Shown here piece by piece: positions 42,930 to 62,377 of a DNA stretch of 64,000 nt. The DNA comes from Ostrea edulis (Eukaryota). The stretch is from assembly GCF_947568905.1 (NCBI RefSeq), contig NC_079171.1:8432001-8496000 (forward strand), read 5' to 3'. A program made the translations under genes and the position numbers. How positions within the stretch are numbered: position 1 is the first letter of the stretch; each line of letters starts with the position of its first letter. The notes beneath the pieces are model-generated. The model worked only from the letters and a program-made list of their open reading frames with translations, had not been told where the DNA came from and ran no database searches.

Positions 42930-43100
42930 ATGTAAAACTTATACGGCATCAATTTAGATGCACCAGATGCGCATTTCGACAAATAATGTTTCTGCAGTGA
43001 TGCTCAACCGAAATGTTTAAAATCCGAAATAGCAATGAAGTTTTAGAGCTATTATAGCCAACAACAGCGTGCCAAAAAAGTGGAGTCAAATTCGTCTAAT
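42930..43100 (-). mobile_element. 5'-truncated retrozyme-like copy
   Basis: Reverse complement matches the 3' ~170 nt of the 61994-62377 element and ends at gtataagttttacat. Confidence 0.65.
42960..43003 (-). ncRNA. Degenerate minimal type I hammerhead ribozyme motif (copy A)
   Basis: Reverse strand reads GCATCA CTGCAGA AACA TTATT TGTC GAA ATGCGCAT C TGGTGC; core A6>C and the first helix II pair is broken. Confidence 0.7.
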
Positions 43101-43274
43101 CCTAATGTATACAATTACGTATGTATCCTAGATCATCAAAAATCTTTGAAATGCACTTTATTTCTTCTCAAAACCATCACCATAATCTTTTCTTAAAAGC
43201 TAACTGCCTTTTTACTTTGTACACATTTGTGCAAGTGTTAACAAAGTTATTCAAGAAATGCGGATTGAATCTAC

Positions 43275-43412
43275 ATTAAAATAGCTAAAATAGCTCTAGC
43301 AATTTATCGTTATTTCGGATTTCAAACATTTCAGTTGAACATAACTGAAGATACATTATTTGTCGAAATGCGTATCTGGTGCATTAAAATTGGTAACGTA
43401 TACGTTTTACAT
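43275..43412 (+). mobile_element. 5'-truncated retrozyme-like copy
   Basis: Matches the 3' ~140 nt of the family; same 3' end. Confidence 0.65.
43339..43382 (+). ncRNA. Degenerate minimal type I hammerhead motif (copy B)
   Basis: ACATAA CTGAAGA TACA TTATT TGTC GAA ATGCGTAT C TGGTGC; core intact, helix I and II mismatches. Confidence 0.7.
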
Positions 43413-44271
43413 TTCCAACAATATACAAAATACTTTGAATAATAAGTAATCAAACCAAAAAATGAAATGATCAACATTTCATTTTTTGAGATAAACAGCG
43501 ACTGTTGTTTTTTTTATCAACAACATTTACTGCCAAAAAATTCCCTAAACTATAAACTTATATTCGATTCATAATAATGCATTGACGTTGTAAAACTTGA
43601 ACATCAATCGTGATATATTTGCCATATATGTATGCATGCAAAAAAAAAAAAACAACAAACAACTGAATTAATGGCCTTGTGGGTTTATTTAACTCAGGCA
43701 AATCAAATAGTTTCAAATGGTTTAAAACGTAACGGGCCTACCGCAATACTATACCAACCATTCGACATTGAATATGTTTAACGATTTCCTGCTTCAATAC
43801 AATACGAAGATTTAAATGTCCAAGTCAGCCGTTGACTGTACGAGTCAGCCCTCCTCGCAAAACTTCAATACGTCGTGTTGAGGCCTGGATCTTTAAATGA
43901 TGTCTACATTCGCCACCGTTTACTATTAGAAAGCACCGATATTTCAAAACCTGCATGTAGATCAAACGTTAATATTTCTAATCTCAGAAGAAGAACATCT
44001 TAACTGTCACTCACGTATCGATACATTGAAGCAGAGACTGTTTTTATTTCATTTACTCTTGCCTCACATAGGCTTCCTATTAAGGGTCTACGCCACAGTC
44101 TTGTCCCGTGACCCGTGGTATAGTGTGAATGAAAGTTTTCTCCCATAATCTCTTTCCACAGGAAGGACAGTGAAATTATTAGTTTGGTATGTGCTTGACA
44201 ACAGTTCATTTATAGACATTACGGTGTGTTCCATTTGTTTTCGAAAATTTAGACGCCGATTCGCCGGATTT

Positions 44272-44288
44272 GAAATGAAACCGAAAGT
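44272..44288 (+). promoter_or_regulatory. ISRE/IRF-E-like element before TRIM copy 2
   Basis: GAAATGAAACCGAAAGT, matches the GAAANNGAAA consensus. Confidence 0.55.
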
Positions 44289-44307
44289 TGATTTGTAATT
44301 TATAAAG

Positions 44308-45714
44308 ATGGCAACATCCCTAGACAGTTCTTCGATGGAGGATGTTACATTGTGTTCTATATGTTTCGAAAAGTTCAAGTCGCCGAGGTTTTTACCGTGT
44401 ACACATTCCTTCTGTCACGGTTGTTTATCTTCCTACATTGTTAATATGTGTAAATCTACAGAGTCGCGTTTGGGATTCAATTGTCCATTATGCCGCAGGT
44501 ACATACCCTGTCCTGGCGCATTCGATAAGCCAGATGCGCGGACGAGGCTATTTCCGTTGAATAAAGTTTTGGAGACAATCGTTAAGAAACCTGATGGGAA
44601 ATTATGTGATGCCTGTTTACGAGAAAACGAAAGTGAAAATGCTATCGGGTTTTGCTTGTCTTGTACTGAATATTTATGCAAGATGTGTACCAAATATCAC
44701 AAAAGGCAATTGCTCTCAAGAGATCATACCATATGTCAACTGAACGAGATGAAATATGGCAACATATTTCCCGAATCAGGAAATATCCATAGCTGCCCAA
44801 AACATAAAAGGGAAACTGTCAAATTCTTCTGCAATGATCACCAGCAGTCCTGTTGTTCAGTGTGTATAGGAAGAAAGCACAGAAAATGCGAAAGTATTGA
44901 TACTGTCGAAGATGCAGCAAAAAATATAAAACAAAATCGCCAACTGGATCTTTGCATCACGTACGATGTAAATTACATTGCGTTATCTTTAGTTAATGAA
45001 TTCAGCATTGATGGAGAAAATCCGATTGTGTGGACTGGGAATTTTCTGTCCAATGGTAACTTTGTATTTGCAGACTACATACCTCATGGCCGTTGTTTTA
45101 TTTATAACAAAGACTGGAAATCCACGGAAGTCATTGATGGACTGAGTTATCCTTTTGAAGCAATACAAGCCGGAGAGGAGCTACTGGTGACGTGTGATGG
45201 AACGAAGTCTATAGAAGTTTTTTCTATGTCTGATTTGCATAAACTGCGAAGTGTCAATATAAACGAAACAGTGTATGGAATAACACAACACAATGGAGTT
45301 TGTTATGTAGCATGTGGAAATGAGATTATAAAATTGAATCTGTCTGGTAAAAAACTTAGAGAATATAAAGTCGAAGGCAATTACAATATTCACATAAGTA
45401 CAACAAAAGATGGACATATTGTGTACAGTAACTGTTCGCTGAATACAGTAACCGCCATCACGGACCAGGGAGACACCGTGTGGCAGTATAAACATATCAA
45501 AATGAAAGTACCCCGTGGACTTGATGTAGACTCTGTCGGTAATATCTTTGTTGCCGCTAGAGGAAGTGACAATATCCACGTGTTGTCTGGCGCTGGCAGT
45601 CTCATTAGGATTATCGAGGATATTCCACAGCCAATGTTTATTAAACTAATGGAAGAGAGGGATATATGTTGTGTGTGTAGCAATCGCAGAATCATGAAAG
45701 TGTATAAACTGTAG
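44308..45714 (+). CDS. Intronless TRIM-like protein, copy 2, lacking the coiled coil, 468 aa
   Basis: Colinear with copy 1 except for an in-frame deletion of ~156 codons between KNIKQNRQLD and ITYDV; ORF otherwise intact. Confidence 0.88.
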   Translation: MATSLDSSSMEDVTLCSICFEKFKSPRFLPCTHSFCHGCLSSYIVNMCKSTESRLGFNCPLCRRYIPCPGAFDKPDARTRLFPLNKVLETIVKKPDGKLCDACLRENESENAIGFCLSCTEYLCKMCTKYHKRQLLSRDHTICQLNEMKYGNIFPESGNIHSCPKHKRETVKFFCNDHQQSCCSVCIGRKHRKCESIDTVEDAAKNIKQNRQLDLCITYDVNYIALSLVNEFSIDGENPIVWTGNFLSNGNFVFADYIPHGRCFIYNKDWKSTEVIDGLSYPFEAIQAGEELLVTCDGTKSIEVFSMSDLHKLRSVNINETVYGITQHNGVCYVACGNEIIKLNLSGKKLREYKVEGNYNIHISTTKDGHIVYSNCSLNTVTAITDQGDTVWQYKHIKMKVPRGLDVDSVGNIFVAARGSDNIHVLSGAGSLIRIIEDIPQPMFIKLMEERDICCVCSNRRIMKVYKL

Positions 45715-48700
45715 ATTTTGTTAATTTTGTCGTAATAAAATATTCAGAAAAAAATCAATATTAATGTTTATATGAAAATTGTCTTATCCATATACATTGC
45801 TAGTATTACCTTCATTCTAGGAAACTTTGTTATCTCACAAAAATACTAATGAGTATCAGCTGTAATTTTGTCTGCCTTAAATTAGAGTCACAAAACACCG
45901 TTTTTCAGATAAAAGCAAAGGTTGAATTTTGAGAAACTCATAAACTAAAGTTGCCTAAATAAATTTGCCGAAACTCCGATTTCTTAAAGGGGTGGAACTC
46001 ATCGGTTTAATTCATAACTTTTACACTTTTATTTTTCTCCTTCACTACTGCTATCCAAAATAATGGTAGAGACGACAGTAGGCACCCAATTATGATACAA
46101 CTTTATTTCCATATGTAAGGGATCACAGATTTTTGATTTTTTTTAGCATAAACAAGTTTCGGTCTGGTCTATCTAATTGTCCAATTAGTTCTGTTATTGA
46201 AGTTAATGTGAAGATTTGCTCCTGTGTCAATGCTTTAAACTATGGATACAATGCTAGATATATGGGATCTCACATGGTTCGTGATTTGATAAGATTAATA
46301 TTCAACGAGTTGTGTGTTTTCTATCCCTGAGACACAAACAATAAGATGTTCTTTTTATCACATGTTAATCCCTAAGGCTATTTATTTACGTTACTGTAGT
46401 TTTAAGAATTTTACTTCCTGACATGTAAAATTGACGTTTATTTGTGACGTCACAAACGGTGTAGGAAATAGTAGTTTATGTAGTGGTATATCCATTGGAT
46501 ACAGGAGTAAACATCTGATAAATGTAAGTATTTAGTCGTGGACAACATACTGACCGGGATGGACTGATGTGTGATGATAATTTGAATATTCCTTCACGTG
46601 GGACAAAACATGGTGACATTTTTCATTCTACATAATATTCTAAATCATTACAGTTTGTCATTCTTTCTGTTTTCATGTATTGGGCATACTCTAATGTTAC
46701 ATGTATTATATTGTCACGGATAACGGTGCTAGAATGGGATAAATGATAAAGTCACAGAAACAATTTACATATTTATTTGGTATACAACTAAACTTTAAGT
46801 TTATGGTCCTGGTGTATGGCGTTGAGCGTAAACGTTCCTCAAATAGCGTCTGGCTTATACTTAGATCCACTACGCTGATGTATGCTGTCATACGTGGACA
46901 CAACACACATGTCGATGCTCCCCAAAGCGTTTGGTTTGTATACTGTTGTACGTGGTACATGTGTACTTGGTATACAAACTTATAGGTAGCACCTATGACA
47001 ATAATGTCATGCTATATAAACGAACACATGCACACAGGTTTTCAGGTTGAAAACTTACTTTACATTATCCATGAATATATACAACATACACTGTTATACA
47101 TATAAGTTATTTCATATTATAACAAGATACACAAAGTCTAGCAATGCTATGTATATGAGTTACACAGTACGTTTCTTACAGCGAAACAATTATGGCCAGT
47201 ACTACGCGCCGTAACTTTACAAAAAGGACTATATAGCGAACACGTTTATGAAAACGGAAACCGGTATTGAAACAATCACAAAACACAAAGTATGACCTTT
47301 TTAACAAAGAAAATACTATATAAAGATCATTACATAAAGGTCACCTCTGAACACGAGCAACATTTACAACAAAGTCAATGTGTCTGCAATAGCTATTTTG
47401 TAATTGCTGTCATAACATTCTGGTGAAAATGTGCTCAGATGAATGCGTCAATCTCGCATGACAGCTCGGTTCCTACTGAGAGCACGAACTGGCGGTGTTA
47501 TGCTCCAATAGATTGGGGTTTAATAAAGGGGTATTTGTAATTTAAAAGAGGCCCCAAGCAGGATAAAGCTACGTTTGGTTTGACAAAACAAAACTGAACT
47601 AAAAAATGAACATACAAATAAAATTTCACGTGACATACATCATGTCAATGTTTGTATGTATACTATTGACAGTTATATGTACAAAGTGAGAAAACTCAAG
47701 AGAAAATGTCATGGTACCTCCTCGTAGTCCCAGACAGGATAAAACATTAAATTCATATACAAACTGCTAGTCTGTATGTTCGGATTTTGCAATGGTAATA
47801 GTTTACTGTTTGAAACAAGGTTTATATCTCAATCACTGTCTGATAGGCATGAAACTAAGAAGTCGTCAGTGCTATTTCACCCATATATTCTTTATTTGTA
47901 TTGTTGTATCGTTGATGTAGTACTGTTTTTGTTGTGTGAAAGCTACGTAGGGATATTAACATGGAACGGAAGTGAATACATACGAAAGGGTAAATATACC
48001 AATTGATTATAATTGTAAAGATTACTGGTCGATTATTCGTTCATTTAAATAGCGTTCATTTATCAATGATGAAGCATGTAAAACTCTAGTAAACTCGCTA
48101 GTTACATCCAGATTAGATTACGGAAATGCATTGATTTATGATGTTCATTCTCAACACACCAGCACATTTCAGAGAGCACAAAAACAGCTGCAATATTAAT
48201 AACACGCTCAAAAATAATTCGACCATACTACTCCTGTTCTAATAGATCTTTAGTGGCTCCCAGTTGAATACAGAATTCAATATAAGATACCTCTTCATAC
48301 TTTCAAATTTCTCCAGTTTACATAAAGGATATCCTTGCAATTTACAATCCCACAAAATCACTAAGATTCGAATCTCTGATTCTTTTCGAGGTACCTCGGA
48401 CACGTACGAAAACATATGGGAATTGACGTTTAGACAATGCTGCATCGAGTATCTGGAAGTCGCTGTCTTTTAAACTCAGACAATGTCCTTCGCTGTCTAC
48501 TTTTAAAGTGGACCTCAAAACGCATCTATTTTAGATTAGCTTTTAATTTGTGATTATTTTGATATACTTAGTGCCCTTACATACAAAAAGCCTTTGTCGT
48601 TTGTTATTACACCTATGTACTTTCTATGTATTTAATTATTACTATGGCTTGTTTTAAATTGTTTCATATGTTATTAGGGTAATCATATCATTACATTAGG

Positions 48701-48999
48701 CGCTATATATTAATATAATAATTATGCATTTTAATTCTGACACTATGAATATTTTATTCACATGTACCGGGGTATGTGCAAATTCTCTTTCACATTTGTA
48801 AAGAGAACTAATGTTGATAGGGCGCTATATAAATCGTTTCATTACAATTACAAATTACAATTAACATGAAGCGAAAGTGAATAGATGCGAAAAAGCGAAT
48901 ATACCAATTTATTATAAATGCAAACATTACCGGTCGATTCTAAGTCTTAAAAAATAAATAGGTTGTCTTAATGGTTATTATAGTATATATATATCAACA

Positions 49000-49160
49000 C
49001 ATGTGATGTTGGTTCTTATTGGTTATTTTAGTGTATCTATATCAACACATGTGATGCTGGATCTTATTGGTTATTTTAGTTTATATATATATCAACACAT
49101 GTGATGCTGGATCTTATTGGTTATTTTAGTTTATCTATATCAACACCTGTGATGCTGTTT
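49000..49160. repeat. ~47 bp tandem repeat x~4
   Basis: tatcaacacatgtgatgctggatcttattggttattttag. Confidence 0.85.
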
Positions 49161-50044
49161 TCATTTTTTATTTTATTTTTTTATTTGGACTAATTTGTGA
49201 TCTGTTTATCGGTAATAGATTAGAAGATTTATTTATCTAGACAAATTTGCCTGTACATATTAAGACATTCACATTTAGGAAGGTTGATTTGTATGTTTGA
49301 CAAGTGGTCAAAAGCCAAAAAGGTTGCCACAAGGCTATGGCAGGCCAGAAGGGGCACCAGTAAAGTTACACAGGTTGCCATGAGGCTAGGACTGATTAGC
49401 ACTGGCGGAATTATTGACCCCCCCCCTACAATTTTCAAAGTATGTTACAAATCACTGCATACTATAAAAATCAGTAAAATCAAATCATATATATAATAAT
49501 TGATTCTAAAAGGTGAACGTCAAAATACACAAAGTCTATAAATCCATATTTTACATAAGTAGAAGAAATGTACACACATAAATGAATAACTGTATAAAGA
49601 TTCCGAGTTGATTATATATATATTTTCAATAGAAATACTAATAGGCGTTTCTCGAGAGTTGTTTATATATACCATAGTTTAATATTTTGCAGCCCCCCCC
49701 CCCTCCCCGAAATCATGCATTATTTTTTTATTGGCTATTATTAATTTTTTTTCCAAATTTACTTTTTATTTTAAAAACGAGAAACATATTTTGAGGCAAG
49801 AGACGTAACATGCTAGGAAAAGATGTAAGGGTGGATCCAGAAGATAGGGGTCCAGTCGATGGGTCCCCTCCCCCTTTGCGGAAAAAAAGTAAAGTTATTC
49901 AATTTTAAGGAGACTTCGCGTCAAAATGATATGAATGGTGGATATTTGCATGTGATAGCAGCATTCAAATTTATCAACACCAGTATATCATTTAATTCCC
50001 CGATGAATAATACGAAATACTCCTATATATTTAGATTTATATTC

Positions 50045-50177
50045 CCCCCTAAAATAACTCTAAAAGTTCATTTTTATTTCGGATTTCAAACATTTTGGTT
50101 GAGCATCACTGAAGAGACATTATTTGTCGAGTGCACATCTGTTGCATCAAAATTCGTAACGTATAAGTTTTACATTT
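50045..50177 (+). mobile_element. 5'-truncated retrozyme-like copy
   Basis: Matches the 3' ~130 nt of the family; same 3' end. Confidence 0.65.
50103..50145 (+). ncRNA. Degenerate minimal type I hammerhead motif (copy C)
   Basis: GCATCA CTGAAGA GACA TTATT TGTC GAG TGCACAT C TGTTGC; helix II perfect, GAAA damaged. Confidence 0.65.
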
Positions 50178-51661
50178 ATGATATTTTCGTTAGATACAAG
50201 TACATCTACCCCATAAAATTCTTAAACAGTATATGCAACATAAAAGTTTCCTTCAAGGAGGTATGCTTCACCAAGGAAATTTGATATGGATAAAAGTGTT
50301 GGATATGTACAACAATATTTTGAAATTGAAAACTTTCAAATTTACTTTATTTAGTCAAACAATACAATTTTAGTTGAAAGTACTCTGAGAAAAATTCAAA
50401 ACCCTGTTGGACTCGAACACGCAATCTACCATTCAACAGTCGATGTGCGAACCTACTGAGCTACTCAGTTAGGCAAGAATGTTTTAAATGAATAGACAAA
50501 TATTGCTGATATTTATATTTTTATCCATGTTTTAAAAGGACGTCAGCCATCGTGATGATGTAGAGAACCTCCTTAAGAAACAGAAAATTGAAAAGTGAAA
50601 AAGAAGTCCAGGAAATCCTCAGAATGCAGGATTTTACACCACTTACCGCAGAGCCTATTGAGAGTAACCTTTGAATCACTTTTTTTAAAAAAGATTTTAT
50701 ATAAAATCTGAATATATGGATAAAAATGACTCGAATGCGAGAAACAAATAGTAAAACGAAAGCAAATAGATGTATAAACTGTCCGAAGATCTCCCTAAAA
50801 TGTTATGTACACAAGCAAAAAAGGTGTAATTGAGTGGGGTTGGACATTGTGAAAAATAGCTAAAAAATCGATCAAATACTAGATCCCCCGCCACCTTCAC
50901 AAATTCCTGGATCTACCTATGAGGTGTGAGTAGGGGGGATTCAATTCCAAGAAATACAAACAGATGGACTAAAATCACAGCTCAATGTCGAGCAAATAAA
51001 TTTGATTAGACAAAAAAATCAACGGATGATAAATTTTGCCTCATTTGAGTAGTGATAAAGGTGTGTTTGTAAGAGGGGGTGTAACTTTACCTGTGACGGC
51101 TAATTACATGGTTGAATTTTACTCTTGAAATTAGTAACATTCAGGAGCTCCCGAGGGATTCGATCCCGGGGCCCCACCAGAGCTTTGCCTTGGACCAACT
51201 AGGGGCTTTAGGGCGGCCCTCGATCCCCTGCCTCCGGAAACGAATTCCACCCCCCCCCCAACCAGAACTCCAAGATCCACCCCTGATTAGGAGGGACATC
51301 GACAAGGTTACACATTTTCCAAACCACTGAAAAATCAAATGGATTCAAAATCGATATAATGGACTTACTTTGATTTGGTAAGAAGTTGTGACCAAGGTTA
51401 AAGTTTGTGTCAAGTTACATCGTCAATCATTTATTTGAAATAGCCAAAATTCAGAAATATTCCGATTTTCAAATTTAAACCAATCCCAATAGGAATTATT
51501 TCAAAAGTTGTCATCAAGAATATTGTAATCAGAAAACTACATGCCCTTGATATAAAAAGACTGACAATTGAAATGAATTTATCAAAATATCTTCATGAAA
51601 AGGGCATAACATTAACAACAATTTGATTTAGTATATTCTATCAATTTTGATCGGAATTTGT

Positions 51662-52685
51662 ATTTTAGCTCATCTGAGGCAAAGGGATATGTGAACTTTT
51701 CTGATCAAAACTTTCCATTGTCTGCTGTTGTAAACTTTTCATATTTTCATCTTTTTCCAAACCGCCAGGCCAATTTCAACTAAATTTAACACAAAACATC
51801 CTTGGGTGAAGTGGATTCCAGTTGATTGAAATGAGGAAAAATACTCTTTTCCAAGGAGATATGATAATGAAGATGCACTCTCAATTTTTAATGTTCTCCA
51901 GAACTAGTGAGCCAATTTTAATCAAACTTGGTACAAGGCACCACTGTCCCTTTCAAAGGGGAGATAATCACAAAACATTGGATTTAGTAATTTAAATGTT
52001 TTCTCACGAGCCATTGGTTCATGCAAGTTCAAATTTACATAACGGATTCCTGACATAGTGCATATTTGAGTGTGTTAAAACCATAACCCCCGGACTTAGA
52101 GTAAGGCCCTAATAGGGGATCATTTTTTTTACATCCTAATATGTAGGTAAAATCTTTTATAAGTCTTCTCTAGAAAAACTGAGCCAGAACATGGAAGCTC
52201 TCTCACATAGATCGCCGCGGTGGTCAAGAGGTTAGAGCGTTCGCCCCGCAAGCGGTAATCCGGGATTCGAATCCCGGGCGCGACAGACCTAAGTCGTTAA
52301 AATAATTCCATCGCCAAACGCTCGGCATCAGGTGTGAATGTCACGGGTCCTCGGAGATGACCTTTAAAACGGATGTCCCGTGTCACAGTGGGTGTGGCAC
52401 GCTAAAGAACCCTCAACTCTCAATGGCAAAAAATTAAGCGCCAAGCATTGGCTTAAATTTGCAGTCCCTCACCGGTCTTGGTGACGTCTTCATATGAGTG
52501 AAAAAATTTCCAGCTAGACGTTAAGCAAGATTCAATCAATCAATCTCCGACATAGTGTAGATTCAAGTTTGTTGCAATCATGGCACCGGAGGTTAAGTGG
52601 GATCACAATAGGTGATATGATTTAAGTTTTAGGGGGATCTTTAAATATAGGCAATTTGTTTCGGGCGAGGGATGTGGCCCATAAG
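51662..52685 (-). mobile_element. Non-autonomous Helitron-like element interrupted by a SINE
   Basis: Colinear with 31040-31745. Confidence 0.6.
52211..52543 (+). mobile_element. tRNA-derived SINE, full length
   Basis: A-box tggtcaagaggttag, B-box gattcgaatccc, (caat)n tail, imperfect ~12 bp TSD (tctctcacatag/tctccgacatag); empty site at ~31615. Confidence 0.85.
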
Positions 52686-52859
52686 CCCTTTCTTTTATCT
52701 AGTTTGACTGAAATCTAAAAACAAAATAGCAATATTTCTTAACTTTGGTCATTTCATTTCAATTTCTATTTGTCCGATATATCTTTTTTTACAACTTGAC
52801 AAATTAAAGGAGGGGGGATGTAGTAATTAGGACTATACGGACCATGGATATCGCCCTCT

Positions 52860-53300
52860 CAGGGGCCGAAATTAACATTTTTACCCCAGGCTAATTTTAG
52901 CCTGTGGATATAAAATCCACAGGCTAAAATGAAAACCTACATGCAAAAATTTAAAAAAATATATCAAACAATGCTTTTTTGTGCTTTATTTTAATAAGTG
53001 ATTTTCCCATGATTACTTAGTCTTGTGTTTAGACAAGTCAGTCACTGATGTGGGCCATAGGGTGCGATGTTGGGTCTCTTGACCCTCATTCCACTGATCC
53101 ACCACCTGTTGACAACAGGTCTGGGCTCGAAGTCTTCCAGTTTCTTACCACACATGTTTATGAGCATTAAAATGTTCATGGTTTCATTATTTAGACTACA
53201 ACGCCAACCACTTTTTATTCTCTTCATTGTAGAAAACCCCTTTTCACATGAGGCATTGGAAAAGGGAAATGGTGATGCAAGATAATAATTTCCATGATGA
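52860..53300 (-). pseudogene. hAT transposase C-terminal dimerisation-domain remnant with one terminus
   Basis: ORF 53042-53332: SNASCEKGFSTMKRIKSGWRCSL...LMLI...W resembles the hAT dimerisation motif; caggggccgaaatt terminus at 52860. Confidence 0.7.
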
Positions 53301-53383
53301 TCTTGTATATGCATATATAGCCTATATAACATAGTGGTTAGAGCACCTGACTAGTAATGTAGGGGCCCCGGGTTTGATTCTCG

Positions 53384-54461
53384 GTGTTGTAGCATAGAAT
53401 ATCCCCCGCATAGACTTTCCCCCCGGAAAAATGGGCCCGGGATAGACATTCCCCCTGGAAAGATGAGTCTGGCATAGAATTTCCCTCGAGGAAGAATTAC
53501 CCCCCCCCCCAGGAAAAATCGCCACAGTATAGAATTTCCGTCTAAATGACAGTACGCGTTTTCCCCCTTCTTACATTTTAGCTATGTGTCCATTTCCAGT
53601 TCAATTACTAAAATTTTCTTGCTTATCTGGACCCAGGAATTCTTATTATTTTTTTTAATTTTGAGCAGGGTCTTGTGTATCACAATCATCATCTTATGTT
53701 TGGGGCCTTTTTTTTAAAGGAAATTATTCAAATTGTGTAATGGTATATCAAAATTCATTCATACATTTCAAGTCTTTGATGTTATCTACCAGTATCTAAC
53801 ATCTGCAATAATGAAGTTGGGAAGAAGTTAATGTCTTTTTAATTCAAAATTTCGAATTCAAATAAACGGTTAGTTTTATTCATACAGTGCATTTAATTTA
53901 CTTTTTAGATATTCTAATTGTACATGTATATCTTTTAGTCGACTTTTTACGAAAAACCCTGATAATATTGATCACTGTTCAAGTCTTGGGAAGCGTATTG
54001 TATTTATTATACGCAATTCAAAGTTTTCAGCGTGTAAACCCAACTTCAACAACTCCACAGAATTCCTTTATTTTATGAATATCGTAATATTAACGAGCGC
54101 ATATATATTTCATTAAACTATAACAATTTAAAAACACATATTTGTTTCTTTCTGTAACTATTTTTTTGATAACAAGTAGATACCTCTTTATAGCAATAAT
54201 AATAAATTTCATTGATTATTATCTTCAGCTACATGGATTTGCTTCATTCTATATTTATTTAAAAGCTTCTACATGAGAAGAAAAATATTCCAGTATATGG
54301 AAACAGGAGGGGGAAATTCTATACCAGGACGGTTTTTCCAACAAGGGGGAAATACTATACTGACTTTGTATATAGGGGGGATTATATGCCTGGGCGCTTT
54401 TTCCCCCTATGGGGAAGATCTTTCCCGGGTCCGTTTTTCCGGGGGGTCTATGCTACTATAC
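53384..54461. mobile_element. ~1.08 kb TIR element inserted at a CG dinucleotide
   Basis: gtgttgtagcataga/tctatgctactatac; absent from the paralogous site at ~32000. Confidence 0.65.
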
Positions 54462-56473
54462 CGACCAAGCCACAAATGTTCTCTCCCCTATATACTACAG
54501 TTGGTGCCGTGACCACCCCTGCAAAGCATGCTGTCCTGACAGGAGCGAAAATAATCTGGGTTGCGTATCTCTGAGGATGAAGGCAATTTAGGGAGGGTGG
54601 AATGTAGCGGTCAGCCGAATTCGAACACCGATGGTCAGATACCTTAGTTGGTAGAACACCTGATTAGGCATTCAGGGGGGTCAGGTTCGCATTTCGGTGT
54701 GGTCCGTTGGATATTATCCTATTCCGTTACATGGTGCCGTAGATCAGCCCTGGAACTGACAGATGGAAATGTCTGCCAGAGGATAAAGATCCTGGGCTGG
54801 TGTCATCAAGGAAATTCAGAGGACCCGGGTTCGAATCCCTGTGTGCTCCATTTTTATTTTCCCCATTCCTATAATATAATTAAGAACTTGTTTTACTTTT
54901 CCGATGAAGAAATGATGCTTTATTTAAGGTGCCTATACGAAGCATTTAAGATGAAAAGTTAGTTAATGAACCACGTTAAATATTTTCTAAATCTGAAATA
55001 TATGTATACAGTGGTGGATTGAAAGAGGTGCAGCCGCCCACCCTCTAAAATTGTCAAATTTGAGGTAAAATGTGGTCTCTTGCTAAAAACAATGTAAACA
55101 ACAAAAGAAGTAGAGACAAATCAATGACAAAATCTTATTGAATTACTATTATTGGGAGAACATTTTCCCTTAAAATCTGCGTCACTTTATCAATTCAACC
55201 TCCTGCTTCATAAAGTTGTGCCCCAATAGCTGCAATTCTTGGATCCGTCCAGGTATACATTCTTAAAAGGAAGTTCCGAAAGTTTGAAAACTGTATATCC
55301 GTCCAAATTTAGTATTTCTCATCTTGAAATACCAATACAGTAACTGTTACCCACGTATTACTGTGTTGAATTAGTCTATAGATAAATCGAATCTAAACCT
55401 TAACCACCACCTCGCCACCAAATCGGATTAGGTCTATTTATGTCCCACATAGGATTCCATGTTTCTGAATACTCTGCCTACGTCACAGCTTTGTTCCGTT
55501 TCTGCACACATTTTCAGTGTGACTATATTCTGCACATTGATGTCAGTGGCGGATTTAAGGGCGGCGCAGTCTCCCCCCCCCCCCCCCCTAACATTTTCAA
55601 ATTTAAGGTAAATTGTGGTCTCTTGTTTAGAAAAATGTAAACGATCACAGAAGGAATTATTCCACTCTCGTAGGAATAACTGACAAAATATTTTCATTTA
55701 CTGAATTACTTTTAATAGGAAAACTTACATTTTTTTCTTCCAAAAACCCTTAATATTAGCGTCGTTTTATTAATTTTACCTTTTTACATGTAAAAATTAC
55801 AGAAAGTAGTAAAAATTACTACATAGGAGAAATATTTCAACCTTATAAAATTTGTAAAATCCAGCCAGGACCCCAAGCGGGCTTCGCCCCCTGGACTTCC
55901 TTCAGGGCTTTGTTCTTGACCCACTAGCGGTCTCATGGCGGCCCCAAGCCTCACAGAAACGTTGCACCCCCTCACCGGAATTCCTGGATCCGCCCCAAGT
56001 GTTGCGAACATTATAAACCCCGACGTACAGGGAAAACAGTATCACTATTTAGTTATCTAGAATTCAAACCTTTAGATAGATCTATACTCGGCCTTAAATG
56101 GTCTCAATCTTGGAAAAAAATCCCTTTATAAGATCGATATATTATATTCCAGTAATACATAAGCATTGAAAAATATATATGTTTACATATTCGATAGAAT
56201 TCAAACCTTAACAAAATCAAATTACATTTATTTATGTCCCGCATATGTTTCCATGTTCCTAGATCTTGTCCCGTTTCTACACGCCGAGGTTGACTTCGGA
56301 TATTTTGATATTTTAAAATCCAGATCTACAAGGAGGACAGTGGAACGTATGCTTTATGTGCTTGTTGGCAATGACAACGTGGACAATCGACACTTCATCT
56401 ACAAACACCACAGTGTAATATTCCATTGTTTAAAAAAATAGAACTCCGAGGTTACAGCGGGTTCACCGAATTT

Positions 56474-56490
56474 GAAATGAAACCGAAAGT
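56474..56490 (+). promoter_or_regulatory. ISRE/IRF-E-like element before TRIM copy 3
   Basis: GAAATGAAACCGAAAGT, identical to copy 2. Confidence 0.55.
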
Positions 56491-56507
56491 TGATTTGTAA
56501 TCTAAAG

Positions 56508-58382
56508 ATGACAACATCACTAGACAGCTCTTCGATGGAGGATGTTACATTGTGTTCGATATGTTTCGAAAAATTCAAGTCGCCGAGGTTTTTACCGTGT
56601 ACACATTCCTTCTGTCACAGGTGTTTATCTTCCTACATCGTTAATGTGTGTAAATCTACGGAGCCTCAATTGGGATTCAATTGTCCATTATGCCGTGAGT
56701 ACATTCTTAGCCCTGGTGACTTAAAAAAGCCAGAAGAGTGGGCAGGACTTTTCCCTTTTAATGATATTCTACAGACAATCGTTAACAAACCTGATGTGAA
56801 GCTGTGTGACCCCTGTTTACGTGAAAACGAAAGTGAAAATGCTATCGGGTTTTGTTTGTCTTGTACTGAATATTTATGTAAGATGTGTACCAAATATCAC
56901 AAAAGGCAATTCCATTCAGGCAACCATATCGTATGTCAATTGAACGAGATGAAATCCGACAATATATTTCCTGAATCGGGAAAAAATCACGATTGCCCTG
57001 AACATAAAAAGGAAAAAATCAAATTCTTCTGTAACGATCACCAGCAGTCCTGTTGTTCAGTGTGTATAGGAACAAAGCACAGAAAATGCGAAAGTGTTGA
57101 TACTGTTGAAGATGCAGCAAAAAATATAAAACAAAATGGCCAACTGGATGTTCTTTTGGGTGATGTGAAGAACCTGGAAAAGAAACTGACAAAAGCAAAG
57201 AGCGAACAAGAGATACATGTAGCAGAAATAGAGAATTCAGTGGACGAAATTATAGAGAAAACAGAAAGGGAATTCAAGGAACTTGTTGATCACCTAGAAA
57301 TACTGAAGAGCAGACATTTAGATGAAGTAGCAGGTGCACTGAAGAAAGGAAGGGGGAAGTTAAGTGATTGTACAAATGTACTTACTGATGGTATACAGTG
57401 TACAAATTACTGCTGCCGGAACATTGAAAGAGCTAAAGAGACGGATAATGATGTTGAAATTGTAACTACTTATTACAGAGTGAAAGAGAGGCGTTTACAG
57501 CTTAAACGGTTTAAATTCACGAAGAAACAGATAACGATATCTGAAACGAGTTCACAAGTTTTGAGAGAAGTGAGAAATATGGAATCTTTTGGTGATATTG
57601 AATATGCTGAGTCTGATCGTCATATCACGTACGATGTAAATGACATTGTGTTATCTTTAGTTTCTGAATTCAGCATTACTGAAGGAAATCCGAATGTATA
57701 CACTGGGAATTTTCTGTCAAATGGTAACTTTGCAGTTCCAGATTGCAAATCTAATGGCCGTTGTTTTATTTATAACAAAGACTGGCAATCCACGGAAGTC
57801 ATTGATGGACTGAGTAGCCCTTTTGAAGTCATACAAGCCGGAAATGAACTATTTGTGACCTCTCCAGGGACGAAATCTATAGAAGTCTTTTCTGCGTCTG
57901 ATTTACATAAACTGCGAAGTGTTAATATAAACGAAACCGTGTATGGAATAACAATGTACAATGGAGCGTGTTATGTAGCATGTTTAGATAAAATTATAAA
58001 AATTGATATGTCCGGTAAAAAACTTAGAGAATATAAAGCTGAAAGCAATAATAATATTAACATAAGTGCAACAAATGATGGACATCTTTTGTACAGTGAC
58101 TATTCCCGTAATACAGTAACCGCAATCACGGATCAGGGAAACACCGTCTGGCAGTATACACATCTCAGAATGAAAACTCCCTGTGGACTTGATGTAGACT
58201 CTGTCGGTAATATCTTTGTTGCCGCTACAGAAAGTGACAATATCCACGTGTTGTCTGGCGCTGGCAGTCTCATTAGGATTATCGAGGATATTCCAAAACC
58301 AGTGTTTATTAAACTAATGGAGGAGAGGAGTTTGTGTTGTGTGTGCAGTGACTGCAAACTTATGAAAGTGTATAAACTGTAA
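56508..58382 (+). CDS. Intronless TRIM E3 ligase-like protein, copy 3, 624 aa
   Basis: Colinear with copy 1; ATG at 56508 is homologous to the starts of copies 1 and 2 (the ORF track begins at an upstream TTG). Confidence 0.93.
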   Translation: MTTSLDSSSMEDVTLCSICFEKFKSPRFLPCTHSFCHRCLSSYIVNVCKSTEPQLGFNCPLCREYILSPGDLKKPEEWAGLFPFNDILQTIVNKPDVKLCDPCLRENESENAIGFCLSCTEYLCKMCTKYHKRQFHSGNHIVCQLNEMKSDNIFPESGKNHDCPEHKKEKIKFFCNDHQQSCCSVCIGTKHRKCESVDTVEDAAKNIKQNGQLDVLLGDVKNLEKKLTKAKSEQEIHVAEIENSVDEIIEKTEREFKELVDHLEILKSRHLDEVAGALKKGRGKLSDCTNVLTDGIQCTNYCCRNIERAKETDNDVEIVTTYYRVKERRLQLKRFKFTKKQITISETSSQVLREVRNMESFGDIEYAESDRHITYDVNDIVLSLVSEFSITEGNPNVYTGNFLSNGNFAVPDCKSNGRCFIYNKDWQSTEVIDGLSSPFEVIQAGNELFVTSPGTKSIEVFSASDLHKLRSVNINETVYGITMYNGACYVACLDKIIKIDMSGKKLREYKAESNNNINISATNDGHLLYSDYSRNTVTAITDQGNTVWQYTHLRMKTPCGLDVDSVGNIFVAATESDNIHVLSGAGSLIRIIEDIPKPVFIKLMEERSLCCVCSDCKLMKVYKL

Positions 58383-60879
58383 TGTTCGTTAATTTTGTGT
58401 TAATAAAATACCAAGTTTCACCTTCATTCAAGGAGACATTGTTATTTCACAAGTATACTCACGTGTATCAACTGTAGAGTTTTTTTTCTGTCTTGAATTA
58501 CAGGCACATGTTATCGACTCGATTTCCAAATAAAGATAGAGTGCAGTCGGAGGTTAGCCTAAAACAATGAACAAGCAATATACAAAATAGTAAATCATGG
58601 GTGTAGTGACGATGGAATCTTGGGACTTCATCAACTAAAATCGCCTAGCTTGTTTTGACTAAACTCTATTTTTTAAATCGAATGTGGGGTGTTCATTGGT
58701 TCAAATCATAACTTTAACACCTCCATTCTTCGCATTCACAACTGCTTTCCAACATAATGGGGAGGCGACAGTAGTCACCCATTATATCTTCATTTGCATC
58801 TGTAGGGTGTCACAGAATCTGGATTTTCAAAATTATTAACATTTATTTATTTTTAACATTCAGTAAGGAATTTTGGGTCTGGTCTATCTAATTATCCAAT
58901 TAGTTTTGTTATTGAAGGTAGCATACAGATTTTCTCCTTTGTTAACGCTCTAAGCTATGAAAAAAATCTTTGAAATATAGGATATCCCGTGGTTCGTGGT
59001 TTGATATGATTTATATTCAACGAGCTGTGCGTTTTCTATCCATTTCCTACAAACCATAAGATATTCTTTTAATTACATGTTAACACCCTAAGGCTATTTG
59101 TTTACTTTACTGTATTGGGAATTTTACTTCGGGACATTTTTTACACAAACAACGTAAAATTGACATTTATTGGTGACATCGCAAACAGCATATGAAAACA
59201 TAGTGAAATAACCATGTTTATGTGATGGGTGATATCCACTGGATAAAGCAGTAAACGTGTTATAAGAGTAAGTATTTTGTCGTGTGCGACAAGGAAATCC
59301 CCACATTCTTTCTTTAAAATGAAGAATTTAATGATTTCTTTGTCGGTTGGATACTTAACTTGTCTATCTGTGTATGTTATGTTTAGATCTGGTTGTTCTT
59401 AATTAGTGGGTCAGAGTTACATAATTTGATAAACTGAAAGTATTCGGGCACGGACCCAGTAAGATTTTTTTCAGGTGACAGACTCCTTCGAATTGTTGTC
59501 TGAAACAACTGATTATGGTGGTAATCTACAATATGTTTTAGATTTTAAACCCTCCAACAAATATATATTACCAAGACAGTGGAGAATATGCTCAATGAAA
59601 TCGAACAGAAAAATGTCTGTTTTTCTTTGTTTTTATGTGAATAAATGCGATTCTGATAGAAGATCAAATATAAACAATGCTATCGTTGAATGCCTCGCAC
59701 ATGTATCACATGTATGTTACGCAACGAAGCGTCAACGCACTGGACTTACTAAAGCAGGCCTTTGAAGCTAGTTTTGCAAAAGGGAGTTCATGGGCGTCAT
59801 TTTCAATCCCTGCAAACTGATAAACTTAAGACTTTGTACATTGGTGGTGGCTGTTCCTTTCCTAAGAATCCAACATTAGAGGTGAAGATTAAAAGGTAAA
59901 GCTGAAATGAGATTATAGATAGCCTTTGATTTGTTTTCGTGTGCATTTTGTGCTATATCTCTGCACGATATCGAGTCTTTAGAAAACTACACAGTCTCCA
60001 GTGTTCATTAAGCCTGGTTTATTCACTGTTAGTGTTTTATTATGGCGAGGTGCCGTGTCCCCTTTTTTCCGGCACCGTGCTTTTTTTTGGCGTGCTTTTT
60101 TATTCGTGCCCTTATCCAGCGTTGTGCCCTTTTCGCTTGGAAAATATCGATTTTGCTCTTAAAACGATATCACCATGCCCTATTTTCATTTTGGAAAAAA
60201 ATATTAAAAATACACATATTCAGGTATTATAGCCTGGTATTTTCAGATTTGCAAAAACGCCTCATTTATCTTGAATCATATTGTTATTAAAATACCTACT
60301 ATTAAGCGTTTAAAACGGAAGAGCAACAATGAAATGAAGCTGAAAGCCAAATCTTACTAGACGATGTCAGCATTTTTTCAACAGGTTCGTAAAATTTAAA
60401 CGTGCTCATCTAAAATCAGCGTAACGAAACTGAATCAGGTCACCGATCAGCTGATTGAGGACACAGATGCCAAATAGTAAACCTTTATACCTATTGCTAT
60501 ATCGTTCTTGTATTTGTTGCATACTAAGTAACACGTGGAAATATGTAACTTCGTAATATGTATGTATATGTAATATATGTATATATTAAAAAAATGCATG
60601 GATCAAATTAGATCGGCAAAATCCCTAATTTCTTCGACCCGCTGTAAATGGATTAACAAGTGGTTGGTTATGTTTAAAAAGTATGTCCATAAACACCACG
60701 TTATATTTATCTTTTTCTCTCTTCTTTTAAAACTTCTTATGTATCTCGGGTTTGTAATTCTTGTACAGTGGAGAGGGGTATGTGACGTGTTTCAATGACT
60801 GCACTCCCTCCCTTTTCTTTGGAACATTTTGATTCAAAAGAATTCATGAGATTGGTGGACTGGTGGACTGTTAGCTAGT

Positions 60880-61254
60880 ACATCAAAATTGGTACCGTAT
60901 AAGTTTTACATTATGACCCCTGGGTCGAGGCCTCTGCTAGTGGACTATTAGTCCCCGAGGGTCGTACAGCCCAGTAGCTAAGTACTTCGTTACTAGCTTG
61001 AAAATATGGATGTATATTTGATTGCTGTGATAAAATTTAGAAATTCATTTCAAAACCCTCATGCATAGCTCTTATAATAAGACGAATTTGACTCCACTTT
61101 TTTGCACTCAGTTTTTCCCTAAAATAACTCGTACGATCGTACAAAAAATGTTATTTCAGATTTCACAAATTTCGGTTGAGAATCACTGAAGAGATACCAT
61201 TTGTGAAAATGTGCATCTGGTGCATCAAAATTGGTACCGTATAAATTTTACATT
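60880..61254 (+). mobile_element. Retrozyme-like non-autonomous element, one full monomer (342 nt) plus terminal repeat
   Basis: catcaaaattggtaccgtataa..ttttacatt occurs at both ends (60881 and 61223); hammerhead motif near the 3' end. Confidence 0.7.
61180..61223 (+). ncRNA. Degenerate minimal type I hammerhead motif (copy D)
   Basis: GAATCA CTGAAGA GATA CCATT TGTG AAA ATGTGCAT C TGGTGC; helix II disrupted. Confidence 0.6.
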
Positions 61255-61993
61255 GATCACTGTGAGGTCTTCCCTTGTTTAAAAAAATGGTCATATGCGG
61301 AATATCTCCTGATGTGTTAACTCGGATGGGAAATATCAACACCAGGTGATACTTATCTTTCCTCTCTATCAAGTTTTTTAAGTATCTCGAATTTTGTTAT
61401 TCTTCTACAGTGCAGTGGAAGATCTGAGGTATTTCAAGGATTTCAACCCTCTCCTTCTCGTTGGAATATTTTAATTCGAAAAGGTTACATTGTCTTTAAA
61501 CGAGAATCGTGATCCTCTCTGTTGGGCTGAAAATTACTTGAGGTTCAACGATTCCCAATTTTAAAAAAAGTAGATACTGGACACGGATAGATAAAGATAC
61601 ATCTAGAGATATCTAGATCAAGACTGACGTCGAAATATCTCTAAGGAGGTTGTTAATCGAACGTAAAAATGTTATTTTCTATATCTAACAAAATGGATGA
61701 AATCAGCAAAGATTTTTATTAAGATGGGTAGGGACAGGGAGACACGTCCTTGACCTGAGCTTTCATTCATGTTATAAGTGTATCACGAAATAGCTTGGTT
61801 CATGAGGTGCTTCACAATGACATTCAGTGCAGTTCTAAAGTGCACTTAAAAAGAAATCATTTTCAACCAATTTAACTTCATAATATTTTTTTTCATGTCA
61901 GAAAAATAACAATCCTCGTTCCCTAAGACCCATGCCTCAACATCGTGAACAGTAAAGATAACAAGCAGTCATCAATCTTAGATTGGATTTGGG

Positions 61994-62377
61994 TGCATCA
62001 AATTTGGTACAGTATAAATTTTACAGTATGACCCCTGGGTCGAGGCCTCTGCTGGTGGACTGTTAGTCCCCGAGGGTCCTAAAGCCCAGTAGCTAAGTAC
62101 TCCGTTACTAACTTTAAAATACGGATGTATATTTAATTGCTGTTATAAAATTTAGAAATTCATTTCAAGATTAAAGATTATCTCCCTCACGCATAGCTCT
62201 TATCCCTAGACGAATTTGATTTCACTTTTTGGCACTCTGTATTTCCCTAAAATAGCTCTAATACTTCATAGTTATTTCGATTTAAAACATTTCGGTCGAG
62301 CATCACTGAAGATATATTATTTGTCGAAATGGGTATCTGGTGCATCAAAATTGGTACCGTATAAGTTTTACATTATA
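61994..62377 (+). mobile_element. Retrozyme-like non-autonomous element, one full monomer (347 nt) plus terminal repeat
   Basis: Same layout as 60880-61254; absent from the paralogous site at ~37995-38020. Confidence 0.72.
62300..62343 (+). ncRNA. Degenerate minimal type I hammerhead motif (copy E)
   Basis: GCATCA CTGAAGA TATA TTATT TGTC GAA ATGGGTAT C TGGTGC; core and helix I intact, helix II and III mismatches. Confidence 0.7.

What the first reader, a model, noticed from the sequence alone, without database searches (positions are those of the whole stretch)
42930..62377. Hidden hammerhead-ribozyme retroelement family (oyster retrozyme / non-autonomous Penelope-like element)
Seen: five copies of one non-coding repeat (42930-43100 minus; 43275-43412; 50045-50177; 60880-61254; 61994-62377). 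Their column consensus is GCATCA-CTGAAGA-GACA-TTATT-TGTC-GAA-ATGCGCAT-C^TGGTGC. That gives helix I (GCATCA/TGGTGC), the CUGANGA box, a 4 bp helix II, GAAA, a self-complementary helix III (ATGCGCAT) and an AUC cleavage triplet. Established: minimal type I hammerheads with palindromic helix III, acting as dimers, are typical of Penelope-like elements and of metazoan retrozymes that give small circular RNAs. Inference: this is such a family. Every copy here has at least one disabling change, two at the CpG of the palindrome, so only the consensus or source copies would cleave.
Basis: partly seen in the sequence, partly recalled or inferred. Interest (0 to 1): 0.88.

Follow-up and report, generated by a model that had tools for sequence, protein, structure and literature searches.

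The report
Oyster hammerhead retrozyme repeat family

Summary
Five copies of one repeat lie within 1-10 bases of the stated coordinates.

Intact copies match Rfam Hammerhead_1 end to end at 31.2 bits, just under the curated cut-off of 34. None of the five window copies gives any hammerhead match.

The unit is 349 nt, 39% GC and non-coding. It is dispersed as arrays of 0.24-3.8 units. The 3' end is fixed 35-43 nt past the predicted cut. 5' ends vary, and there is no consistent target duplication. These are marks of retrotransposition, not of a satellite. Penelope-like elements (RT plus C-terminal GIY-YIG) are present, but none with this hammerhead or tail was found among the nine loci read.

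The family fits the metazoan non-LTR retrozyme class (Cervera and de la Pena 2020). It is a new member of a known kind.

Self-cleavage, action as a dimer and circular RNA remain untested. There is no covariation and no unusual folding stability. 5' ends show a step at the cut site, which is suggestive only.

The scan had already noted this family on other pieces of this genome.

The parts
42930..43097 (-). Copy 1: 5'-truncated (unit positions 219-349 plus the 36-nt tail). Hammerhead segment at 42960-43003 has core A6 changed to C and G10.1 changed to A.
   Evidence: blastn; alignments; no Rfam hammerhead match
43285..43413 (+). Copy 2: 5'-truncated (258-349 plus tail), head-to-head with copy 1 and 187 nt away. 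Hammerhead segment at 43339-43382 keeps the core, but helix I has two mismatches and the G10.1 pair is broken.
   Evidence: no Rfam match
50046..50176 (+). Copy 3: 5'-truncated (255-349 plus tail). Hammerhead segment at 50103-50145 has one A of GAAA deleted, the palindrome CpG mutated and a helix I mismatch.
   Evidence: no Rfam match at E up to 10
60878..61254 (+). Copy 4: one unit plus tail (3-349 plus 1-37), 85% identical to the reference. It carries a single hammerhead at 61180-61223, with core G12 changed to A, C11.1 changed to G and the CpG changed to TpG.
   Evidence: no Rfam match
61992..62375 (+). Copy 5: one unit plus tail (2-349 plus 1-38), 91% identical. It carries a single hammerhead at 62300-62343, with the core kept, the G10.1 pair broken and the palindrome reading AUGGGUAU.
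   Evidence: no Rfam match

Best explanation
The five stretches are dead copies of a young, very abundant, non-coding retroelement of 349 nt. It belongs to the metazoan 'non-LTR retrozyme' class.

Shown here:
- Intact members carry a type I hammerhead with helix I of 6 bp, the CUGAAGA box, helix II of 4 bp with a 5-nt loop, GAA, helix III of 2 bp closed by the palindromic loop GCGC, and the cut after AUC.
- Insertions end at a fixed point 35-43 nt downstream of the cut site.
- Insertions start anywhere in the unit and hold from 0.24 to 3.8 head-to-tail units.

Inferred from the described families:
- Arrays that hold two or more hammerheads are transcribed.
- The ribozymes cut out unit-length RNA. 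Because helix III is so short, they probably act as a pair through the 8-nt palindrome.
- A host tRNA ligase closes the RNA into a circle.
- A Penelope-like reverse transcriptase/GIY-YIG endonuclease starts cDNA synthesis at an internal site (unit position about 37). It copies circular or multimeric RNA into nicked DNA, giving more-than-unit and 5'-truncated copies.

All window copies carry only one hammerhead, and each is mutated. They can neither cut nor release a unit.
For: - Five copies and their unit coordinates.
- The exact 44-nt hammerhead occurs 5,537 times against 0 for the reversed control; 15,075 times with up to 3 mismatches.
- Rfam RF00163 match over model positions 1-45 of 45, 31.2 bits, E 7e-6 in a 500-nt search, every core base and every helix pair present.
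- In 47 independent arrays the 3' end always falls at unit position 35-43, while 5' ends range over the whole unit and lengths run from 85 to 1,313 nt.
- Copies are only about 2-4% from the majority sequence per site.
- The unit is 39% GC, with no frame open for more than 69 codons.
- 5' ends per 7-nt window jump from 68 just upstream of the cut site to 226 just downstream. Four of the 47 arrays start exactly at position 1.
- Literature: mussel retrozymes of 350-390 bp with about 5,000 hammerheads and circular RNA (PMC7229834); Penelope-like RT initiates internally and leaves a 30-40 bp 'tail' (PMC11167929); retrozymes related to Penelope pLTRs (10.64898/2026.07.22.740005).
Against: - The Rfam score is below the gathering cut-off (31.2 against 34), and no match appears at gathering level.
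- There is no covariation. No pair has changes on both sides, and shuffles equal the observed values, as expected for a young family. The structure therefore rests only on its fit to the known consensus.
- The circular fold is no more stable than shuffles (-73.0 against -69.6 +/- 5.4, z = -0.6). The catalytic fold (-3.7 kcal/mol) is not the minimum-energy fold of the 44-mer (-7.8).
- No Penelope-like element with this hammerhead or tail was found in the nine loci read.
- Only 41 hammerheads with the exact first 28 bases have a different context at positions 4-7 upstream of helix I, and their flanks are diverse.
- Target-site duplications are not clearly above the control (mean 3.9 against 3.5 nt).
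- The excess of 5' ends near the cut site is partly confounded by tail-only mini-copies and indel artefacts.
Confidence: 0.85

Rival explanations
1. These are solo terminal repeats (pLTR fragments) of an autonomous Penelope-like element, not a separate non-autonomous family. The 349-nt unit would be the element's terminal region, left behind or over-replicated.
For: Penelope-like elements carry hammerheads in their pLTRs, form partial tandems and inverted pairs, and have a 30-40 bp tail (PMC8557442, PMC11167929). Copies 1 and 2 are head-to-head. A recurrent junction, TAAATTCAC|ATCAAAATTGG, makes up about 14% of the matches listed. It may be another element that shares only the last 31 nt or so.
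Against: Arrays are continuous head-to-tail units with no coding insert. Of the hammerheads whose first 28 bases are exact, only 41 have a different context at positions 4-7 upstream of helix I, and their flanks are diverse. Nine RT/GIY-YIG loci show no similarity to the unit beyond one chance insertion.
Confidence: 0.07
2. It is an ordinary satellite or tandem repeat spread by DNA-level processes (unequal exchange, or carriage on Helitron-like elements). The hammerhead would be a relic without present function.
For: Tandem arrays exist (L003 has 3.8 units). There is no covariation and no special fold stability. Some copies are multiplied by segmental duplication.
Against: - About 15,000 hammerhead copies are scattered over all ten large contigs.
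- Arrays are mostly under two units in the less biased sample.
- Every array shares one precise 3' end while 5' ends differ.
- Flanks are unrelated.
- 37% of the hammerheads are still letter-perfect.
Confidence: 0.04
3. It is a SINE-like element moved by a LINE, and the hammerhead-like stretch is a chance resemblance.
For: It is short, non-coding, dispersed and 5'-truncated, with a fixed 3' end. Two weak polymerase III box-like strings were seen by eye in the unit. This was not tested.
Against: - There is no poly(A) or simple-repeat tail.
- ARAGORN finds no tRNA in the window, which holds all five copies, so the unit shows no tRNA-like head.
- Head-to-tail more-than-unit copies are not a SINE feature.
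- The motif has the full 13-base core plus three helices and matches RF00163 with E 7e-6 in the local search.
Confidence: 0.03

Closest known systems
Non-LTR retrozymes of invertebrates, best studied in the mussel Mytilus galloprovincialis (Cervera and de la Pena 2020, PMC7229834)
   Same: Both are from bivalves. Both have a 350-390 bp non-coding unit of low GC and a type I hammerhead with a 6 bp helix I, a 4 bp helix II and a short helix III. Both have thousands of copies, are tandem from dimers upward, and co-exist with Penelope-like elements.
   Different: The sequence is unrelated as far as could be checked (no sequence string found in papers). Most copies here are below two units. Cleavage and circular RNA are shown for the mussel and not for this family. 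The circular fold here is no more stable than shuffled sequence.
Penelope-like elements: pLTR hammerheads, partial tandems and the 30-40 bp 'tail' (PMC4209133, PMC8557442, PMC11167929)
   Same: The insertion ends at a fixed internal point a few tens of bases downstream of the hammerhead cut. Unit-plus copies have a 37-nt terminal redundancy. Arrays are head-to-tail and there is an inverted pair. Target duplications are variable or absent. RT+GIY-YIG elements are present in the genome.
   Different: There is no ORF. The hammerhead is of the canonical type, without the extra base between A9 and G10.1 and without the long helix II of the minimal Penelope motifs. No sequence shared with a Penelope-like element of this genome has been shown.
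Newt and axolotl satellite 2 hammerhead repeats (about 330-350 bp)
   Same: The unit length is similar. Both have a type I hammerhead whose helix III is 1-2 bp closed by a palindromic tetraloop. In the amphibians this acts as a dimer.
   Different: Amphibian repeats form long arrays with more than 100,000 motifs. Here arrays are short and dispersed. Action as a dimer is not tested here.
Plant LTR retrozymes (PMC4918200)
   Same: Both are non-autonomous and hammerhead-bounded, and the plant elements have circular RNA intermediates.
   Different: Plant elements have type III hammerheads inside true LTRs, a primer binding site, a polypurine tract, 4-bp duplications, high GC and Gypsy-type helpers. 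None of these is seen here.

Membership tests
Hammerhead ribozyme, type I (Rfam RF00163) | Conserved core: CUGANGA, GAAA and a cleavage triplet UH | tested here: met
   Met by the family: the exact motif occurs 5,537 times and is the majority sequence of 83 copies. Window copies 2 and 5 keep the core. Copies 1, 3 and 4 have lost a core base.
Hammerhead ribozyme, type I (Rfam RF00163) | Three helices around the core, with helix I open (type I) | tested here: met
   Helix I has 6 pairs, helix II has 4, and helix III has 2 plus a tetraloop. 92.7% of cells are paired, against 11-52% when the 3' partner is slid. No pair has compensatory changes, so this is fit to the consensus, not covariation.
Hammerhead ribozyme, type I (Rfam RF00163) | Score at or above Rfam's gathering cut-off (34 bits) | tested here: not met
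   Intact copies score 31.2 bits over model positions 1-45 of 45. There is no match at gathering level in the window or in 20 loci. The whole-genome search with RF00163 gave nothing, but its positive control also rang nowhere.
Hammerhead ribozyme, type I (Rfam RF00163) | Self-cleavage after H17 | not testable with these tools
   Indirect evidence only: a step in 5' ends at the predicted cut (68 against 226 per 7-nt window) and 4 of 47 arrays starting at position 1.
Metazoan non-LTR retrozyme (PMC7229834) | Type I hammerhead inside a short (150-450 bp) non-coding repeat of low GC, without LTR, primer binding site or polypurine tract | tested here: met
   349 nt, 39% GC, longest open frame 69 codons. 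Ends are a 37-nt redundancy, not LTRs.
Metazoan non-LTR retrozyme (PMC7229834) | Head-to-tail tandem copies, so that two ribozymes flank a unit | tested here: met
   Met by part of the family. Arrays reach 3.8 units. In the less biased sample, five arrays hold two or more hammerhead cores. It is not met by any window copy, each of which has one hammerhead.
Metazoan non-LTR retrozyme (PMC7229834) | Expressed as unit-length linear and circular RNA | not testable with these tools
   No RNA data are available here. The predicted circular fold is not unusually stable (z = -0.6).
Non-autonomous derivative of a Penelope-like element (10.64898/2026.07.22.740005) | Penelope-like elements present in the same genome | tested here: met
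   The ORF at L057:1447-2844 (-) has RVT_1 plus a C-terminal GIY-YIG. 150 of 150 scored GIY-YIG candidates pass the cut-off, many of them as tandem or inverted pairs.
Non-autonomous derivative of a Penelope-like element (10.64898/2026.07.22.740005) | Sequence shared with the terminal (pLTR) region of an autonomous element | tested here: inconclusive
   Nothing was shared in the nine Penelope-like loci read. Only about 1.5 kb of flank was held for each, and no more genome sequence could be fetched.
Non-autonomous derivative of a Penelope-like element (10.64898/2026.07.22.740005) | Penelope-type insertion signature: a fixed internal RT start, a 30-40 bp tail, and partial tandems or inverted copies | tested here: met
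   The 3' end is at unit position 35-43 in 47 of 47 arrays. Unit-plus copies carry a 37-nt terminal redundancy. Copies 1 and 2 are head-to-head. Compare PMC11167929.

The most novel reading that the evidence does not exclude
The 37-nt terminal redundancy may be the Penelope 'tail', and its upstream edge is the hammerhead cut. On this reading ribozyme cleavage sets the 5' end of the retrotransposition template, and internal initiation by the reverse transcriptase sets the 3' end. The step in 5' ends at the cut site would then be the first genomic trace of a role for hammerheads in Penelope-type mobilisation. The published work leaves that role open: hammerhead mutants did not affect insertion in vitro (PMC11167929), and the function was called unclear (PMC8557442).
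Probability: 0.2. Interest if true: 0.6.

Novelty: new member of a known kind. Interest (0 to 1): 0.3.

Why it matters
The finding adds a well-defined oyster family to the metazoan retrozymes. It has about 15,000 hammerheads, and a third of them are letter-perfect. Because the family is so young and numerous, its insertion ends can be read precisely. The 3' end is fixed 37 nt past the cut site. That matches the internal reverse-transcription start recently shown for a Penelope-like element, so it links retrozymes to that machinery from the genomic side. For genome annotation, the family accounts for up to about 0.5% of the assembly (rough estimate: 15,000 hammerheads times 349 nt) and escapes Rfam's curated threshold. 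None of this changes the accepted picture.

Tried and rejected
- Rfam at gathering level on the window and on 20 loci gave nothing. The laxer search was needed.
- The whole-genome search with RF00163 gave nothing, but its control also rang nowhere, so it is uninformative.
- Covariation on 83 natural hammerheads: none.
- Circular fold stability: not different from shuffles. Cofolding of two copies did not give the extended helix III as the minimum-energy structure. The double-hammerhead topology cannot be written as a nested structure, so its energy was not evaluated. The 8-nt palindrome alone gives a -10.5 kcal/mol duplex.
- Target-site duplications are not clearly above a shuffled-pair control. 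A few of 9-13 nt exist, and there are hints of microhomology to the TTTTACAT end.
- Apparent 5' ends at query position about 300 turned out to be an artefact of how candidate stretches were cut (compare).
- 5' ends at the cut site were counted with patterns of three excluded letters, six free positions and a 19-nt anchor. There is a real step at the cut site, but no sharp genome-wide peak at +1. Judged by eye from the first 100 listed matches, roughly 11% start exactly at position 1. The counts are contaminated by indels, slip deletions between the two GCATCA repeats, segmental duplicates and tail-only mini-copies.
- Search for an autonomous partner: nine GIY-YIG loci were read. L051 is the host SLX1-like gene. 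L054:665 carries a different hammerhead-like motif on the opposite strand. No partner was found.
The recurrent junction and the young 787-codon Penelope-like family could therefore not be read.
- A search of papers for strings of the motif found nothing.


Full report
**What is in the window**

A natural monomer was cut from locus L003, from one predicted cleavage site to the next (349 nt). It was compared with the window by blastn. Exactly five copies appear:
- 42930-43097 (-)
- 43285-43413 (+)
- 50046-50176 (+)
- 60878-61254 (+)
- 61992-62375 (+)

Position 1 is defined as the base after the predicted cut. On that numbering all five copies end at position 36-38. Three start inside the unit (219, 258, 255) and two start at position 2-3. 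The window is G000:C8:8432001-8496000 of an 895 Mb assembly in 52 contigs. It is eukaryotic.

**The hammerhead**

- The 44-mer GCATCA-CTGAAGA-GACA-TTATT-TGTC-GAA-ATGCGCAT-C-TGGTGC occurs 5,537 times in the genome, against 0 for the reversed control.
- With up to three mismatches it occurs 15,075 times.
- It is the majority sequence of 83 copies taken from 44 sources, the window and 43 loci.

In a 500-nt search an intact copy matches Rfam Hammerhead_1 (RF00163) over the whole model (positions 1-45 of 45). Every core base and every helix pair is present, at 31.2 bits and E 7e-6. That is below the curated cut-off of 34 bits, so searches at gathering level are blank.

By the description in PMC4209133 this is the canonical metazoan type I architecture: helix I of 6 bp, helix II of 4 bp, and helix III of 1-2 bp closed by a small palindromic loop. 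It is not the 'minimal' motif of autonomous Penelope-like elements, which has an extra base after A9 and a long helix II.

**State of the window copies**

None of the five gives a hammerhead match, even at E up to 10 in short stretches. From the alignments:
- Copy 1 has lost core A6 and the G10.1 pair.
- Copy 3 has lost an A of GAAA and the CpG of the palindrome.
- Copy 4 has G12 changed to A, C11.1 changed to G, and the CpG changed.
- Copies 2 and 5 keep the core but have a broken G10.1-C11.1 pair and further helix or palindrome changes.

'Disabling' is shown for three copies and inferred for two. In addition, each window copy holds only one hammerhead. Even intact, it could not release a unit.

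**Anatomy of the family**

Fifty loci were read. Thirty came from a similarity search. Twenty were taken in listed order from the exact-motif list.
- After removing overlaps and segmental duplicates, 47 arrays remain.
- Every one ends at unit position 35-43 (...GTTTTACAT[T]).
- Lengths run from 85 to 1,313 nt, that is 0.24 to 3.8 head-to-tail units.
- 5' ends are spread over the unit.
- Flanks are unrelated. Target duplications are not clearly above a shuffled-pair control (mean 3.9 against 3.5 nt). A few clear ones of 9-13 nt exist, and some upstream flanks resemble the TTTTACAT end.
- The unit is 39% GC with no open frame above 69 codons.
- Copies differ from the majority by about 2-4% per site. 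Subfamily-diagnostic sites lie only between positions 201 and 281.

A fixed 3' end with variable 5' truncation, dispersed over all large contigs, is the signature of target-primed reverse transcription. It is not the signature of a satellite.

**Link to Penelope-like elements**

The genome holds them.
- One ORF has RVT_1 followed by a C-terminal GIY-YIG domain (L057).
- All 150 scored GIY-YIG candidates pass the Pfam cut-off. Many sit in tandem or inverted pairs with open frames of 787 codons.

Frangieh et al. 2024 (PMC11167929) showed that a Penelope-like reverse transcriptase starts inside the RNA, downstream of the hammerhead cut. They showed that the 30-40 bp 'tail' of genomic copies reflects this. 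The fixed end 37 nt past the cut and the 37-nt terminal redundancy of unit-plus copies fit that picture. So does the head-to-head pair formed by copies 1 and 2.

No shared sequence with a Penelope-like element was found in the nine loci read. Among hammerheads with the exact first 28 bases, only 41 have a different context at positions 4-7 upstream of helix I, and their flanks are diverse. The helper is therefore inferred, not identified. A recurrent junction, TAAATTCAC|ATCAAAATTGG, makes up about 14% of the matches listed. It may be a second element that shares only the last 31 nt or so.

**Does the ribozyme cut in vivo?**

This cannot be tested directly. As a proxy, 5' ends were counted genome-wide in 7-nt windows. 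The patterns demand three non-matching bases, six free positions and a 19-nt anchor.

| Unit positions | Matches |
|---|---|
| 343-349 | 68 |
| 1-7 | 226 |
| 8-14 | 292 |
| 57-63 | 115 |
| 154-160 | 134 |
| 286-292 | 77 |

There is a three-fold step exactly at the predicted cut. Among the 47 arrays, four start at position 1 and seven within positions 1-6, where about 0.8 would be expected.

There are caveats. The windows at 1-14 also catch tail-only mini-copies. Many matches are indels, slip deletions between the two GCATCA repeats, or duplicates. By eye, only about 11% of the listed matches in the 1-7 window start exactly at position 1. I read this as suggestive evidence that some templates had a 5' end at the cut. 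An earlier follow-up in this scan came to the same cautious view (s1-311841).

**Structure tests that gave nothing**

- No pair of the hammerhead shows compensatory change, and shuffles equal the observed values. That is expected for a family this young.
- The circular fold of the unit (-73.0 kcal/mol) is no better than shuffles (-69.6 +/- 5.4, z = -0.6).
- The catalytic fold is not the minimum-energy fold of the isolated 44-mer.
- The palindrome AUGCGCAU can form a -10.5 kcal/mol duplex with a second copy. This makes paired action plausible, as in newt and Penelope hammerheads (PMC4209133). It is not a test.

**Comparison and verdict**

The family meets the sequence-level definition of a metazoan non-LTR retrozyme (PMC7229834). 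Its closest described relative in kind is the mussel retrozyme: 350-390 bp, about 5,000 hammerheads, abundant circular RNA. It also shows the Penelope-type insertion signature that a recent preprint (10.64898/2026.07.22.740005) uses to argue that animal retrozymes are non-autonomous Penelope derivatives.

I found no paper that describes this particular sequence, so it is a new member of a known kind. The scan had already noted the same family elsewhere in this genome (s1-292085, s1-274744, s1-311841) and on this window (s1-287577).

Interest is modest. The mechanism is the expected one, and cleavage, pairing and circles remain to be shown at the bench.

Noticed in passing
window 34400-36271 (+), 44308-45714 (+), 56490-58382 (+): Three intronless ORFs of 623, 468 and 630 codons, each with a RING finger and a B-box (TRIM-like), form a paralog cluster. 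The retrozyme copies lie between them.
   Followed up: partly
window 52214-52285 (+): A tRNA-like relic with a clear T-arm. It scores 17.4 bits against RF00005 (cut-off 29), and ARAGORN finds nothing. It is probably a tRNA pseudogene or the head of a tRNA-derived SINE.
   Followed up: partly
window 22127-24766, both strands: Frames of 858 and 867 codons are open on opposite strands over the same stretch, with only scattered sub-threshold Pfam matches. It looks like a long low-complexity or tandem repeat, not a gene.
   Followed up: no
window 42930-43413: Copies 1 and 2 are head-to-head, 187 nt apart and both 5'-truncated. This is either the inverted-pair arrangement typical of Penelope-like insertions or two independent hits.
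   Followed up: no
genome-wide, e.g. G000:C1:13168476, C2:18409492, C3:13331424: The junction TAAATTCAC|ATCAAAATTGGTACCGTAT recurs in about 14% of the matches listed. It may be a second repeat family that shares only the last 31 nt or so of the retrozyme, and so a candidate helper or sister element.
   Followed up: no
L054:665-730 (+): A different hammerhead-like motif (CTGACGA, a 4-bp helix II, GAAA, and the palindromic loop GCGC) lies next to a GIY-YIG locus, on the opposite strand to the GIY-YIG match. It suggests that other hammerhead-bearing elements exist in this genome.
   Followed up: partly
G000:C1:110503255-110516013 and many others: A young Penelope-like family shows identical GIY-YIG scores, open frames of 787-840 codons, tandem copies spaced 3,717 bp apart, and inverted pairs. 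Its ends could not be read.
   Followed up: no
L052-L060: The Penelope-like copies that were read are flanked by (TA)n microsatellites, in line with the published target bias of some Penelope clades.
   Followed up: no
G000:C8:65458109-74979094: One truncated retrozyme copy with the same flank is repeated more than 20 times along about 10 Mb of contig 8. It has evidently been carried along by a larger segmental or tandem duplication.
   Followed up: no
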